From assembly GCF_963853765.1 (NCBI RefSeq), contig NC_088854.1, positions 12,214,001-12,278,000 of the forward strand: 64,000 nucleotides of DNA, written 5' to 3'. The notes under the pieces were generated by a model. That model saw nothing but the letters and a program-made list of their open reading frames with translations, did no database searches and was not told the origin of the DNA. Of this stretch, positions 6,701 through 9,700 are shown piece after piece. Position 1 is the first letter of the stretch. Each line of letters starts with the position of its first letter. A program made the translations under genes and the position numbers. This DNA is from Magallana gigas. Taxonomy: Eukaryota.

Positions 6701-9700
6701 GTCTACTTTAAAAAGTGCACAATATCTATAATATTTTGCTTTCACAGCAAGTATATGTACATTGTACAGGTATATCAAGGAACATATTTAATAGGAGACA
6801 GAATGTTTCCAAGTTCAATGTACCTTTTCCTCATGTTGTTTCTGTAAAGCTGTGATCTTTTTCTCATTTTTGCGTGACTGGACAGACAATTCTTTCTCTA
6901 GCTTCTCAATCTCTTCCTTGTAATCATGGTCGTTATACTCTGTGTCCTTCAGCTTGCCCTGTGTCCTTGTCAAATCCGTCTTAGCACACACTGCCTGCTC
7001 CATCAGCCATTTCAAGGCACACTTAGCCTCCACCATGGTATGTAGAGTGTCCCAGGAGATCTTGCCTTTTATATCTGCCATTTTAATTCATTTGTATTAA
7101 CAAAATTCTAATTAATGATAGCTCTGCATAATGCAAAATTGCATACAAATCAGTTACAATATTTGAATAATGAAATAATATCTACCTTGATCAGCGTCTA
7201 CGATCTTCTGCTGAAGCTCAGAGATTTGGGCATTTCTCAATACCATCTCTCCTTCCAAGGTGGCTATCTCCTTGTTCATTTTGTCTACCTCAAAACTGAC
7301 CTCTGTCTTGTCCCCGTTCTCTGCCAGCCAGGCCAGCTTTTTGATTGGTGGGCCATCTGTTTCGTCCTCTATCTTCTCCTTAAGGTCTTTGATTTGTTTT
7401 GCAATGTCTTTCCTGTCACTGAGGAGTCGCTCCAAGTGATATTTTGCCTCTCGAATACTGATCCTGACCTCTAATTCATGGCTCAGCCAAGACTGTGAAA
7501 CCCCAAAATATACATCATGTAAAGCTTTGCTAACATGATGCTCACTGACTACCAATCTATATCAAATATATACATTTATATGCATTATCTGACACACCTA
7601 CCCTGACTCGGTTTCCAATGGTTGATGAATTGTAGGACTCGAGTTTGTTAGCTCTCTCCTCCTGTATTTGCTTCTGTTTTGCTAATGCATCCTTTAATCT
7701 TCTGTTGGCTGCTGCAGCCTAAGATTTTAAGTTATAGTTAAAGTACATTTTATTGAGTATATCATGGATACCCAAGAGGGCGGTGACGAGTTTGCGCAGC
7801 AAACGAGTCTCCGCCCTCTTGGGTATCCATGATATACTCAATAAAATGTACTTTAACTGGCTTGTATCAAGGACCAATCAAATCTTTCGAATTATATGCC
7901 CGCGAAAAAAAAATATCCGTAACATTGCCCGCGAAATGATCGACAACATTCGTAAAATTCCGGTGAATTTTCCCGCTTCAGCATCTAGTTAATTCATTGT
8001 AGCCGAAGACCTTCGGAATATTCCGTGACTAAAATGCCGCCAAATGTATCATTTTCGGCAGATCACGTGCATCAAATCCCGATCAATTTGAGTCATTATT
8101 AGCCTAAAACCGGACGAAGATGGACATGGAGGATCAACAGAGCTTGTTGACGATAGACCTGGGCGATCTCGACTTTTTATGCGGGGATATTATAACAGAT
8201 GAAGACATTCAACTATCACAAGTTTGTGAAGAAATAGAGCAGGAACATGATATTTCCGAAGGTTTGTGCCAAATATTAAGCCTCGAAAGGGGGTGCTGAG
8301 TTCGGTTCATTTGAAATGGATTATCATAATGCTTGCCCAGAAACGACGGATTCTGCCCCGAAACTACCAGCTGCAAAATTGGAACCCAATGAGAATGACG
8401 ATACCCGTTTCGGAGAACCTGCGACGGATGAGGACATTTCCAAGCTAATCGCATCAACTGAAAATGCAAACACCAAAAAAAATACTGCATGGGCTTTGAG
8501 GGTCTTTGAAGAATGGCGAAACCAGCGACTTCGCAATTCTGATGCTGAAATCCCGTTTTTGCACGTGATGACTGCGGAGCAGCTGAACTTTTACCTTGGA
8601 CGGTTCATCGTGGAAACCCGTAGGAAAGACGGCGTCGAATACCCACCTCGATCCCTATACCTTATTACCTGTGGATTATTGCGCCATCTTAAGGACAAAA
8701 ACGTCTTTGACAAAAACATCTTGGACAACAATGACTGTAGATTTAGTGAGTTCCGGAAAATTCTCGATAGCAAGATGAAAGACCTCTTGAAGCGCGGTTT
8801 TGGAACATCGATAAAACAAGCGGAGCCCATCATGCCGCAGGATGAAGAAAGCATGTGGAACAAAGGAATATTCGGCGATAAAGATTCGGAAACTCTTCAG
8901 CATACCATGTTCTATTACAACTGCAAACTCTTTGGTTTACGTGGACATGACGAACACCACGAACTTGAGTGTAGTCAGTTTGTTCTTGGGACTGAAAACT
9001 CCGGAAAATATGTAGAATTCATCGGGCGTGCCAGCAAGACGTACAAGGGCGGTTTGGCGCAAATGCAGCTAACAAATAAGCGCATACGACATCACAGTTC
9101 AGCTGGTAAGTTAACATTAAAAATAATCCATTTATCTAAGTAAATCAATGACTCATTTATAAATAGTAAAATAGTTGTATACATGTAGTGGTAAATGCCC
9201 TACTTTTGTTTTGACCCGACCCTCTACCCCCTAGAAAATTTTAAAATTGACAGTAGAAGTTGCAAAGAGAAGGCCTCGACCCCCCCCCCCCCCCCCCTCC
9301 CCGACAAAAACAACTATCTAGTATGGGACACCAACCCCGGGGAGTTTGTATATCTGCACGTGTTGAAAGATTGTGTAAAGAAATTGAGGTTTCGATATGA
9401 TCTGATTAACTATCAACTCATTTATCGATATTACATGTTACTTATTTTGATTATGTTTCAAAGAATTTTGCTTTTTCTTCCATCTTAGGTGAGCGTTGTA
9501 TCGCGGACTACTATAAAATGTATTTGGATGGTCTGGATAATGCAGGGTCATTCTATCGACGCCCGTTGCAAGGAAGCCCGCCAAAATATGGAAACCAACT
9601 GGTCGGTGTGAACAAACTGAAATCAATGATGAAAGTGATCTGCAAAAAAGCTGGATTGGAGGGAAATTACAGTAACCACTCAGGTAAACGCACCTGCGCA

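What the first reader, a model, noticed from the sequence alone, without database searches (positions are those of the whole stretch)
7736..7858. Strand-specific terminal hairpin (tandem G.A pairs plus GNA/GNNA cap) shared by the Crypton-type elements
Seen in the sequence: every Crypton-type element here begins with a long inverted repeat (48-bp perfect arms in copy 1; ~45 bp in copies 2/3 at 23358-23479 and 44783-44904; ~63 bp at 60744-60886). The arm sequences differ but the apex keeps one fold. Copy 1: GA-CGAG-TTTGC-GCA-GCAAA-CGAG-TC. Copies 2/3: GA-CGAG-TTCGC-GTCA-GCGAA-CGAG-TT, with a compensatory T-A to C-G change. Non-autonomous copy: C-CGA-CGC-GAA-GCG-GAG-G. In each, 5'-GA-3' faces 5'-GA-3', and a short GC stem is capped by GCA, GTCA or GAA, always on the same strand relative to the element. 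Established: tandem sheared G.A pairs and GC-GNA-GC / GNNA loops are unusually stable in DNA and cannot form on the complementary strand; integron integrases (attC) and XerCD acting on CTX phage are tyrosine recombinases that use folded ssDNA. Inference: these eukaryotic YR elements may be recognised through a folded single strand or cruciform, rather than only by the duplex circle excision usually proposed for Cryptons.
Basis: partly seen in the sequence, partly recalled or inferred. Interest (0 to 1): 0.85.

Follow-up and report, generated by a model that had tools for sequence, protein, structure and literature searches.

The report
Strand-marked terminal hairpin of Crypton transposons
Oyster Crypton "cut-and-rejoin" transposons, and relatives in scallop, clam and amphioxus, carry at one end a long DNA hairpin with conserved strand-specific G·A mismatches and a GNA cap, which suggests their recombinase works on folded rather than plain double-stranded DNA.

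Summary
All four hairpins exist as described, z = -16 to -23 against shuffles.

**Conservation.** The same design lies upstream of Crypton tyrosine-recombinase genes, on the gene strand, in Ostrea, Pecten, Mercenaria, two metagenome contigs, one unidentified ENA assembly contig and amphioxus. Arm sequences differ between families but stay paired. Each hairpin keeps one or two CGAG-facing-CGAG tandem G·A sites: 21 exact, none on the other strand. Most have a C(GNA)G or C(GNNA)G cap.

**New anatomy.**
- An empty-site allele in public reads fixes copy 1 at 7729-10290.
- The 3' terminal 8-9 nt (TGATACAA) are the reverse complement of a box 3-5 nt past the hairpin (TTGTATCA). This pair co-varies in two families.
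- In a circular junction the palindrome therefore continues across the joint. In copy 1, with the hairpin folded out, it reads 9-6-9 like a classic recombinase core site.

**Reading.** This is a folded-DNA recombination site laid out like an integron attC.

**Novelty.** I found no paper describing it. Earlier notes of this scan report a palindrome beside Crypton joints elsewhere in this genome.

The parts
7729..10290 (+). Crypton copy 1, a polymorphic 2562-bp insertion; AAG at 7729-7731 is repeated at 10291-10293, so the joint is ambiguous by 3 nt
   Evidence: Contigs of DNA runs X1 and X10 join 7728 to 10291, skipping 2562 with 3 shared letters. Pfam finds QRICH1, DUF3504 and Phage_integrase.
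7729..7735 (+). 5' terminal AAG-TTAT. G-T(T/A)AT is conserved at the 5' end of nine elements, from oyster to amphioxus.
7736..7858 (+). Terminal hairpin of copy 1: 60-nt arms, T7784·T7810 mismatch, one tandem G·A site
7787..7807 (+). Apical module: CGAG, 5-bp stem, C(GCA)G cap, CGAG. G7788·A7806 and A7789·G7805 are the tandem G·A pairs.
7834..7843 (+). Lower-stem position. It is perfectly paired in the window. In run X10 five changes, all in the right arm, mismatch the unchanged left arm (7751-7760); three of them make CGAG facing TGAG, a second tandem G·A site.
   Evidence: table 3, read.
7861..7869 (+). Post-hairpin box CTTGTATCA, the reverse complement of the 3' terminal box
10285..10293 (+). 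3' terminal box TGATACAAG (the element ends at ...CAA)
8316..10006 (+). Recombinase gene of copy 1. Exons are 8316-9104 and 9488-10006; the intron 9105-9487 is spliced out in an RNA contig. The ORF is an intact 435 aa.
   Evidence: (joint 9104 to 9488, GT..AG).
23351..25905 (+). Crypton copy 2. Hairpin 23358-23479. Apical CGAG 23407-23410 and 23425-23428 with cap C(GTCA)G. Decayed lower site CGAG 23384-23387 facing CACG 23448-23451. Box TTGTATCA 23485-23492. 3' box TGATACAA 25897-25904.
42330..44911 (-). Crypton copy 3, an inverted twin of copy 2 that is identical except for a CT microsatellite. Hairpin 44783-44904; G·A sites on the minus strand.
60516..60889 (-). Non-autonomous element. Hairpin 60731-60899. 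Two tandem G·A sites on the minus strand: 60841-60838 facing 60792-60789, and 60822-60819 facing 60811-60808. Cap C(GAA)G. Post-hairpin box TTGTTATAC 60742-60734. 3' box GTATAACAA 60525-60517.
4860..5268 (+). Older, rearranged copy of the same non-autonomous family. Hairpin 4875-5032 has a partial internal duplication, and the lower G·A site is replaced by perfect pairing.

Best explanation
**What it is.** The hairpin is the main part of the cis-acting recombination site of a clade of CryptonA-type tyrosine-recombinase transposons. It probably acts in a folded state: a single-strand hairpin or one arm of a cruciform.

**Anatomy, shown.**
- The element starts G-T(T/A)AT, followed at once by a 100-190-nt imperfect palindrome.
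- 3-5 nt after the palindrome lies an 8-9-nt box (TTGTATCA).
- The element ends in the reverse complement of that box (TGATACAA).
- On the coding strand the stem carries one or two CGAG-facing-CGAG sites, and a short G+C stem capped by C(GNA)G or C(GNNA)G.

**Mechanism, inferred.**
1. After excision to a circle, the 3' box is joined to the 5' end, so the palindrome continues across the joint.
2. With the palindrome folded out, the two boxes form inverted half-sites for two recombinase subunits. In copy 1 this reads TGATACAAG-TTATGG-CTTGTATCA, that is 9-6-9.
3. The crossover point (CAA^G) lies at the inner edge of the outer box, at the foot of the stem, much as the cassette boundary lies in the R box of an integron attC site.
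4. The tandem sheared G·A pairs and the mini-hairpin cap form on one strand only. They would stabilise and mark that strand, playing the role that extrahelical bases play in attC.
5. Insertion leaves no target duplication and needs at most AA of shared sequence. That is compatible with a single-strand exchange finished by replication.
For: 1. **Mobility and identity.** An empty-site allele is seen in two DNA runs. Two copies are 100% identical. The transcript is spliced and the ORF is an intact 435 aa. Pfam finds Phage_integrase, DUF3504 and QRICH1.
2. **Conservation.** A long hairpin lies 200-900 bp upstream of the recombinase gene, on the same strand, in:
   - Ostrea edulis (L002, L004)
   - Pecten maximus (L003, L006)
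   - Mercenaria mercenaria (L007)
   - metagenome contigs L010 and L015
   - L017, a contig of an unidentified ENA assembly, about 35% protein identity
   - Branchiostoma belcheri (L019)
.
3. **G·A sites.** There are 21 exact CGAG/CGAG 2x2 loops plus 3 GA/GA variants, all on the coding strand and none on the other. They make up most of the roughly 30 2x2 loops.
4. **Caps.** GCA, GAA, GGA, GTA, GTCA and GATA, all closed by C-G. The two exceptions are TAT in L017 and L003a.
5. **Controls.** Eight hairpins in the same loci that are not next to Crypton ends show neither feature. The apex motif has 0 chance hits.
6. **Pairing is selected.** 21 of 51 pairs show compensatory double changes among four families, and six different apical stems are all Watson-Crick.
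7. **Outer boxes.** TTGTATCA and TGATACAA occur in five elements. The pair co-varies: TTGTTATAC with GTATAACAA in the non-autonomous family, and TTAGAACAT with ATGTTCTAA in amphioxus. Modelled circle junctions fold into one continuous hairpin.
8. **Non-autonomous elements keep the hairpin**, so it acts in cis.
9. **Published structural data.** A CGAG block is C:G, sheared G:A, sheared A:G, G:C by NMR (PMC10085684). Among GCNNNGC fragments only GNA loops form the extra-stable DNA mini-hairpin, and GCGNNAGC does so too (PMC13037366; PMC3201870).
10. **Precedent.** attC shows folded-strand recombination by a tyrosine recombinase (PMC2727003).
Against: - There is no experiment and no read evidence for a circle junction, a cruciform or single-stranded DNA. 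One search lists no back-joint at the ends, but contigs drop rare forms.
- The energy model gives the two strands nearly equal stability.
- The distance from the lower G·A site to the stem foot or the apex is not constant: 19-62 nt from the foot.
- The 9-6-9 reading is exact only for copy 1. In copy 2 the boxes are separated by a bulged extension of the stem.
- Several related loci show no hairpin: L001, L008, L011, L012, L018, Haliotis L020 and B. lanceolatum L021. Of these only L001 was examined, and it is a decayed fragment.
- Palindrome arms can be kept alike by template switching rather than by selection.
- The AA microhomology lies on the side expected for exchange of the strand that does not carry the G·A sites, which I cannot reconcile.
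- The families share ancestry, so the counts are not independent events.
Confidence: 0.5

Rival explanations
1. The site is a duplex-only cis element. The palindrome and the CGAG motifs are ordinary double-stranded binding sites for the recombinase or a host factor, for example four CGAG sites in direct orientation that load protein directionally. The DNA never needs to fold.
For: - Most transposon ends are read as duplex.
- CGAG sits in a semi-conserved A/C-CGAG-T/G context.
- Half-sites bound by one protein co-vary without any pairing.
- The energy model shows little strand asymmetry.
Against: - It does not explain why 50-90 nt of otherwise unconserved arm sequence stays complementary.
- It does not explain why the directly oriented CGAG copies always sit exactly opposite each other in the fold.
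- The spacing between the two apical CGAG copies varies from 11 to 18 bp start to start, which changes the helical phase.
- It does not explain why the caps are the mini-hairpin type.
- In duplex form the TTGTATCA box lies 130-190 bp from the joint, at a different distance in each family.
Confidence: 0.15
2. The DNA folds, but for a different job. The hairpin would be a priming or replication signal, or a hairpin promoter, for a single-stranded or circular intermediate. It would not be the recombinase's substrate.
For: - GNA mini-hairpins occur at single-strand initiation sites: the phage G4 origin, ssiA of RSF1010, and the phage N4 early promoters (PMC13037366).
- RNA contigs of the element begin at 7851 and 7882, at or just past the 3' foot of the hairpin. 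One is preceded by adapter letters.
- A CCAAT motif follows the box in most families.
Against: - The element encodes no replication protein.
- The hairpin sits within 4-7 nt of the element's end, and its outer box is completed by the other end. That ties it to the joint rather than to an internal origin.
- Contigs of DNA runs also break at the palindrome, so the RNA contig starts may be assembly effects.
Confidence: 0.15
3. The hairpin acts as RNA. Transcribed as a leader, or by read-through, it would regulate the recombinase or feed small-RNA silencing. Tandem G·A in a CGAG context is also a classic RNA motif (from my own knowledge, not checked here).
For: - Strand specificity on the sense strand would fit an RNA.
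- Rfam gives weak look-alike hits to long miRNA precursors.
- The element is transcribed.
Against: - The Rfam scores are far below gathering thresholds: 45.6 against 119, and 39.4 against 200.
- No RNA contig listed covers the hairpin.
- Non-autonomous copies without a gene keep it.
- Triloops GNA closed by C-G are a DNA-specific hyperstable motif.
- The outer stem can form only across the DNA circle junction.
Confidence: 0.07
4. The hairpin is a mechanistic by-product or passenger. The palindrome would be produced or homogenised by the transposition or replication process (fold-back copying, template switching), and the conserved apex would simply be inherited.
For: Clustered one-arm changes either restore or break pairing. 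Five sites in copy 1 differ between the window and run X10, and the lower site of the 4.9-kb copy is perfectly paired. This shows that the arms exchange information.
Against: - Arm-to-arm copying would erase mismatches, yet CGAG/CGAG persists in families sharing only about 35-60% protein identity and across two phyla, while the surrounding arm sequence is unalignable.
- The polarity is invariant: 21 to 0.
Confidence: 0.05
5. The site works like a telomere-resolution site. The recombinase would resolve the extruded cruciform, which is a four-way junction, into hairpin-capped ends, giving a linear intermediate.
For: - A cruciform foot is structurally a Holliday junction, and tyrosine recombinases resolve those.
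- The element end lies 4-7 nt from that foot.
- Protelomerases are relatives of tyrosine recombinases that act on palindromes (established knowledge, not checked here).
Against: - Integrated copies keep both arms at one end only.
- Conserved mismatches would be lost in a cycle that copies round a hairpin end.
- The closest solved relatives by sequence are QRICH1 and XerA, not a protelomerase.
Confidence: 0.04

Closest known systems
Crypton (CryptonA group) tyrosine-recombinase DNA transposons (Goodwin et al.; Kojima and Jurka 2011, PMC3212892)
   Same: - A single intron-containing gene for a tyrosine recombinase whose N-terminal part matches QRICH1 and DUF3504.
- No reverse transcriptase, no terminal inverted or long direct repeats, and no target duplication.
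- Non-autonomous derivatives exist.
   Different: [quoted passage not shown] Here one end carries a 100-190-nt conserved palindrome, there is a split 8-9-nt inverted box, and the ends are defined as G-TWAT ... CAA.
Integron attC sites recombined by IntI (Bouvier et al. 2009, PMC2727003)
   Same: - An imperfect palindrome whose sequence varies but whose structure is kept.
- Conserved outer boxes that pair.
- An unpaired spacer next to the crossover point.
- Strand-distinguishing interruptions of the stem, and a variable top.
- In the integrated linear form the outermost part of one arm lies at the other end of the mobile unit.
- Very little sequence is shared with the target.
   Different: - The host is eukaryotic and the recombinase is unrelated beyond the superfamily.
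- The strand marks are tandem G·A mismatches and a GNA cap, not single extrahelical bases.
- The stem is two to four times longer.
- Use of a single strand is unproven here.
CTX phage attP(+) folded hairpin used by XerCD (established knowledge, not checked here)
   Same: A tyrosine recombinase acts on a stem that exists only when one strand folds. There is one strand exchange, and no duplication.
   Different: That phage supplies single-stranded DNA through its own replication, and host enzymes do the recombination. Cryptons encode their own recombinase and no known source of single strands.
DNA mini-hairpins GCGNAGC / GCGNNAGC and 'CGAG blocks' of tandem sheared G:A (PMC13037366, PMC3201870, PMC10085684)
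   Same: The sequence rules are identical: a C-G closing pair with a GNA or GNNA loop, and pyrimidine-GA-purine facing itself. GCGAAGC itself occurs in the 60.8-kb hairpin and in Ostrea.
   Different: Those are physical motifs studied in oligonucleotides, phage origins and a human promoter. Their use as conserved parts of a transposon end has not been described in anything I could search.
IS200/IS605 subterminal hairpins (established knowledge, not checked here)
   Same: These are strand-specific imperfect hairpins near the ends of a transposon that moves without target duplication, read in single-stranded DNA.
   Different: - The transposase there is an HUH single-tyrosine enzyme, not a tyrosine recombinase of the integrase fold.
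- Hairpins lie at both ends and are about 20 nt long.

Membership tests
Crypton (CryptonA-type) DNA transposon | Encodes a tyrosine recombinase and no reverse transcriptase or DDE transposase | tested here: met
   - Pfam Phage_integrase hits at E = 4e-8 and 2e-7, plus DUF3504 and QRICH1 domains.
- The 2.56-kb elements hold only this gene.
- Box II reads GHRS-x-Y with the usual 9-residue spacing.
- Box I reads HSGKR, with K where XerD has R; that comparison is my reading from memory of XerD.
Crypton (CryptonA-type) DNA transposon | No terminal inverted or long terminal repeats and no target-site duplication | tested here: met
   Twelve left junctions and eight right junctions show no duplication. 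The only inverted feature is the 8-9-nt box, one copy of which is subterminal.
Crypton (CryptonA-type) DNA transposon | Mobile as a discrete unit | tested here: met
   An empty-site joint, 7728 to 10291, appears in two DNA runs. Two copies at different sites are 100% identical.
Crypton (CryptonA-type) DNA transposon | Placement in the CryptonA clade by recombinase phylogeny | not tested
Support is indirect: the DUF3504 and QRICH1 domains, and source names such as 'ZMYM2-like' and 'KIAA1958-like'.
Integron attC-type folded recombination site | Imperfect palindrome with conserved pairing outer boxes, a variable inner stem, and the crossover at the foot | tested here: met
   Outer boxes are shown. 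The joint lies at CAA^G, next to the box.
Integron attC-type folded recombination site | Extrahelical single bases on one arm that select the strand | tested here: not met
   No conserved single-base bulges were found. The conserved interruptions are 2x2 G·A mismatches. So this works like attC at most and is not a member.
Integron attC-type folded recombination site | Recombinase binds and cleaves only the folded single strand | not testable with these tools
   Needs binding and cleavage assays.
DNA mini-hairpin / CGAG block motifs | C-G closing pair with a GNA or GNNA loop; pyrimidine-GA-purine opposite itself | tested here: met
   The cap rule holds in 12 of 14 hairpin families, and there are 21 exact CGAG/CGAG loops. 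The sheared geometry itself is inferred from PMC10085684 and PMC13037366.
microRNA precursor (Rfam) | Score at or above the family gathering threshold | tested here: not met
   Best scores are 45.6 bits against a threshold of 119, and 39.4 against 200.
IS200/IS605-type hairpin transposon | HUH single-tyrosine transposase | tested here: not met
   The only protein is of the integrase fold.

The most novel reading that the evidence does not exclude
A clade of animal Cryptons, spanning bivalves and amphioxus, transposes by structure-specific recombination on folded DNA. The palindrome is extruded or folded. Two recombinase subunits bind the box pair that only the circle junction brings together, and one strand is exchanged at the foot of the stem. 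Tandem sheared G·A 'CGAG blocks' and a mini-hairpin cap select the strand. This would be the first eukaryotic counterpart of integron attC and CTX-type recombination.
Probability: 0.35. Interest if true: 0.9.

Novelty: new variant of a known kind. Interest (0 to 1): 0.8.

Why it matters
**Open question for Cryptons.** Crypton transposition has never been reconstituted. The literature I could search says animal Cryptons have no terminal structures, which is one reason their ends are hard to annotate.

**What this adds.** A conserved, strand-marked terminal hairpin plus a split box gives three things:
- precise ends;
- a sequence-and-structure signature for finding autonomous and non-autonomous copies;
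- a concrete, testable substrate for the recombinase.

**If the folded form is the substrate.** Folded-DNA recombination by tyrosine recombinases would no longer be only a bacterial and phage feature. It would also offer a compact eukaryotic recombinase-and-site pair for engineering. Finally, it would be a natural case where DNA mini-hairpin and tandem G·A motifs appear to be under selection in an animal genome.

Tried and rejected
- **Prokaryotic and viral collections.** Protein-guided scans of the GTDB species-genome collection and of IMG/VR found no relatives.
- **Metagenome scan.** It gave nine loci, of which only L010 and L015 reached far enough upstream to show the hairpin.
- **Loci without a hairpin.** Saccostrea L001 proved to be a decayed fragment that keeps the post-hairpin region but lacks the hairpin and the catalytic exon. 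Haliotis L020, B. lanceolatum L021, L008, L011, L012 and L018 showed no hairpin of this type, and I did not find out why.
- **Satellite at 27084-28404.** This 439-bp repeat contains TGATACAAGTTAAAAG and looked like a possible tandem circle junction. It has no hairpin or other Crypton similarity, so I rejected it.
- **Circle-junction strings.** A regex search in all loci found only chance matches.
- **Target duplications.** A TTAAA duplication fits copy 2 only. AAG in copy 1 is shared sequence and not a general duplication.
- **Fixed geometry.** I looked for a constant distance between the lower G·A site and the foot or apex. There is none.
- **Rfam.** Nothing above threshold.
- **Literature.** Searches for Crypton with hairpin, palindrome, cruciform or stem-loop found no description of this structure. 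Repbase Reports are not in the library.
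Full report
**1.

The window is from an oyster. 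Public runs holding it are labelled oyster, and the nearest named proteins are from Saccostrea, Ostrea and Crassostrea.

| Place | Arms | Loop |
|---|---|---|
| 7736-7858 | 60 nt, 95% complementary | 3 nt |
| 23370-23465, extendable to 23358-23479 | 46 nt | 4 nt |
| 44797-44892, exact inverted twin of the one above | 46 nt | 4 nt |
| 60731-60899 | 83 nt, 87% complementary | 3 nt |

As single-stranded DNA they fold at -51 to -75 kcal/mol, with z-scores of -16 to -23. The quoted apex strings are exact. In each, 5'-GA-3' faces 5'-GA-3' on the strand that has the hairpin at its 5' end. A fifth, decayed hairpin of the same non-autonomous family lies at 4875-5032.

**2. What the elements are, and where they end.**

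- **Gene content.** The ORFs next to the hairpins carry QRICH1, DUF3504 and Phage_integrase domains. These are Crypton-type tyrosine-recombinase transposons.
- **Copies 2 and 3** (23351-25905 on plus, 42330-44911 on minus) are identical apart from a CT microsatellite.
- **Copy 1 is a polymorphic insertion.** Contigs from two DNA runs join 7728 directly to 10291, skipping 2562 bases, with three letters (AAG) fitting either side.
- **Copy 1 is expressed.** RNA runs hold the element, and one RNA contig splices out 9105-9487 (GT..AG). The spliced ORF is an intact 435 residues.

The family is therefore young, and probably active.

**3. The hairpin is conserved far beyond this window.**

I fetched DNA around homologous proteins and scanned it with a general hairpin finder that knew nothing of G·A pairs. 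A long hairpin lies 200-900 bp upstream of the recombinase reading frame, on the same strand, in the loci below.

| Locus | Source | Hairpin |
|---|---|---|
| L002 | Ostrea edulis | 3465-3591, and a second copy whose left arm is split by a 2.45-kb insertion |
| L004 | Ostrea edulis | 4669-4777 |
| L003 | Pecten maximus | about 3337-3467, plus a non-autonomous-looking one at 3008-3123 |
| L006 | Pecten maximus | about 4589-4683, plus an internally deleted minus-strand copy at 7750-7854 |
| L007 | Mercenaria mercenaria | 4156-4256 |
| L010, L015 | two metagenome contigs | L010 at 1-79; L015 apex at 85-97 |
| L017 | contig of an unidentified ENA assembly, about 35% protein identity | 4566-4726 |
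| L019 | the amphioxus Branchiostoma belcheri | 5992-6151 |

The arms cannot be aligned between most families, yet they pair within each. Among the four most similar families, 21 of 51 predicted pairs keep pairing through changes on both sides.

**4. What is conserved inside the stem.**

- **G·A sites.** Folding each hairpin and listing its internal loops gives 21 exact CGAG-opposite-CGAG 2x2 loops. Three variants are also G·A-facing-G·A: CGAC/GGAG, TCGAG/CGATA, and TGAG/CGAG in run X10. About seven 2x2 loops are of other kinds. CTCG/CTCG never occurs on the coding strand.
- **Number per hairpin.** Most hairpins have two such sites: one 3-6 bp below the loop and one lower down.
- **Caps.** They read C(GCA)G, C(GAA)G, C(GGA)G, C(GTA)G, C(GTCA)G or C(GATA)G. 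The two exceptions are TAT in L017 and the Pecten non-autonomous-like hairpin.
- **Apical stems.** Six different apical stems are all Watson-Crick.
- **Controls.** Eight other hairpins in the same loci, not next to Crypton ends, have neither feature. The apex motif does not occur in 20 shuffles of the window.

Published work matches these rules exactly.
- NMR shows that CGAG facing CGAG in DNA forms C:G, sheared G:A, sheared A:G and G:C, with cross-strand stacking (PMC10085684).
- Of all GCNNNGC fragments, only GNA loops form the extraordinarily stable mini-hairpin. GCGNNAGC does so too (PMC13037366; PMC3201870).

The nearest-neighbour model does not capture this. It gives the two strands nearly equal energy.

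**5. New anatomy: a palindrome split by the joint.**

- **5' end.** Nine elements begin G-T(T/A)AT, usually preceded by AA, directly before the stem.
- **Post-hairpin box.** Three to five bases after the stem comes TTGTATCA.
- **3' end.** The element ends in TGATACAA, the reverse complement of that box. This holds for copy 1, copies 2/3, L004, L007 and L002.
- **Co-variation, non-autonomous family.** The box after the hairpin is TTGTTATAC, and the element ends GTATAACAA exactly where the two copies stop being alike.
- **Co-variation, amphioxus.** TTAGAACAT follows the hairpin, and ATGTTCTAA lies about 830 bp past the gene. That match has roughly a 0.1 chance of being accidental, so it is supportive only.

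If the 3' end is joined to the 5' end, as in the circular intermediate proposed for Cryptons, the palindrome simply continues across the joint (folds). For copy 1, with the 123-nt hairpin set aside, the junction reads TGATACAAG-TTATGG-CTTGTATCA. That is two 9-bp inverted half-sites around 6 bases, the classic layout of a tyrosine-recombinase core site. The paper quoted gives 11-13 bp repeats around 6-8 bp.

In plain duplex the two half-sites would be 130-190 bp apart, by a different amount in each family.

**6. Junctions.**

Twelve left junctions and eight right junctions show no target duplication. The element reads G-TWAT ... CAA. The target base before the element is preceded by AA in 9 of 12 cases, and the base after the element is variable. 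AAG in copy 1 is therefore shared sequence, not a duplication.

So little homology is what single-strand-exchange systems show, but it does not prove one. The AA lies on the side expected if the strand without the G·A sites were exchanged. I cannot explain this.

**7. DNA or RNA?**

- RNA contigs of the element start at 7851 and 7882, at or just past the hairpin's 3' foot. None of the pieces listed covers the hairpin.
- DNA contigs also break at the palindrome, so this evidence is weak.
- Non-autonomous copies keep the hairpin.
- GNA triloops closed by C-G are a DNA motif.
- The outer stem exists only across a DNA joint.
- Rfam gives only sub-threshold matches to miRNA precursors.

A DNA-level role is much the more likely.

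**8. The arms talk to each other.**

In run X10 (a different coded organism label) the same element has five changes within ten bases of the right arm. All five mismatch the unchanged left arm. Three of them create CGAG facing TGAG, a second G·A site, whereas the window copy is perfectly paired there.

The older non-autonomous copy likewise has perfect pairing where its relative has CGAG/CGAG.

Clustered one-arm changes of this kind are what templated correction within a quasi-palindrome gives. That is established knowledge on template switching, not tested here. The direction of change is unknown. If arms are prone to such copying, then the persistence of the mismatches in families that share only about 35-60% protein identity argues for selection on them.

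**9. Most likely mechanism.**

Shown:
- a conserved terminal palindrome;
- strand-fixed G·A sites and cap;
- a split, co-varying outer box;
- precise ends without duplication;
- cis retention in non-autonomous elements;
- recent mobility.

Inferred:
- The palindrome is folded out, as a hairpin in single-stranded DNA or as a cruciform.
- This brings the half-sites together at the circle junction.
- Exchange happens at the foot of the stem.
- The G·A blocks and the cap stabilise and mark one strand.

The layout parallels integron attC: conserved pairing R boxes, an unpaired spacer, strand-marking interruptions, a variable top, and the outermost part of one arm carried at the other end of the cassette (PMC2727003). 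It is not a member of that family. There are no extrahelical single bases, the recombinase is different, and the host is a eukaryote.

I put 0.5 on this reading and about 0.9 on the weaker claim that this is a selected, strand-asymmetric cis element of these transposons. The rivals are set out in their own section:
- a duplex-only site;
- a folded priming or promoter signal;
- an RNA hairpin;
- a mechanistic by-product;
- telomere-type resolution.

**10. Novelty and limits.**

The reference description of animal Cryptons reports no terminal repeats and no hairpin. A 2026 paper on fungal CryptonA elements calls their terminal repeats variable or poorly conserved. Four literature searches found nothing on a Crypton hairpin. 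Repbase Reports could not be searched.

Within this scan, earlier notes on other parts of the same genome already mention a conserved palindrome beside a Crypton joint and covariation in a hairpin cap. The hairpin itself is therefore not new to the scan. What I found in none of the searched papers or in those short notes:
- the cross-phylum conservation;
- the CGAG-block rule;
- the split outer box;
- the 9-6-9 junction.

Limits:
- The families are related, so the counts are not independent events.
- Several related loci lack the hairpin, for reasons not established.
- No circle, cruciform or single-stranded form was observed.

Noticed in passing
window 7728/10291: Copy 1 is absent from some chromosomes. 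An empty-site contig appears in DNA runs X1 (depth 2) and X10 (depth 26). The host gene around it is a kinesin-like gene on the minus strand, with a spliced exon at 7602-7720.
   Followed up: partly
window 8283: All other runs carry 23 extra bases after 8283, in the leader of the recombinase gene, that the window copy lacks.
   Followed up: no
window 9217-9317: Contig depth jumps about 10- to 25-fold in RNA runs and about 2- to 10-fold in DNA runs inside the intron of copy 1, with many loose ends at 9279-9313. This is probably a short, very abundant repeat inserted in or shared with the intron.
   Followed up: no
window 9518-10006 and A1 consensus: Recombinase box I reads HSGKR, with Lys where XerD-type enzymes have the second catalytic Arg and Arg one place later. 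Box II (GHRS ... Y) is canonical. Whether this is the usual CryptonA state was not checked.
   Followed up: no
window 42222-42313 and 44937-45028: Copy 3 is flanked, 16 and 25 bp outside its ends, by 92-nt direct repeats that are 78% alike. It probably inserted into a repeated sequence. These are too diverged to be a target duplication.
   Followed up: no
window 27084-28404: A satellite of about three 439-bp units, each with an internal period of about 146 bp. It is unrelated to the Cryptons, despite containing TGATACAAGTTAAAAG.
   Followed up: partly
window 7870-7900, 23493-23500; L002, L007, L006: A CCAAT motif (GACCAATCA, GTCAATCA, AGCCAATAG and similar) follows the TTGTATCA box within about 10 bp in most families. 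It may be the element's promoter.
   Followed up: no
L006 7735-7932 (minus strand): In an internally deleted Pecten copy, a GATACATAA box lies directly on the 5' side of the hairpin and pairs with the TTGTATC after it. A second TTGTATCA-plus-leader segment lies upstream. It looks like a head-to-tail or junction-like arrangement.
   Followed up: partly
L003 3008-3123: A second hairpin lies 200 bp upstream of the Pecten element. It has a CGAG/CGAG site and a degenerate apex, and is probably a separate non-autonomous element.
   Followed up: no
L002 5321-7800: In Ostrea edulis, a hairpin left arm is interrupted after its outer 30 nt by a 2.45-kb insertion. The palindrome was therefore a target for, or tolerated, another insertion.
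   Followed up: partly
L021 2806-2995: Branchiostoma lanceolatum has a 91-nt-arm palindrome 3 kb upstream of the recombinase-like gene. It has an 8-nt loop and no G·A sites, so it is a different kind of element.
   Followed up: no
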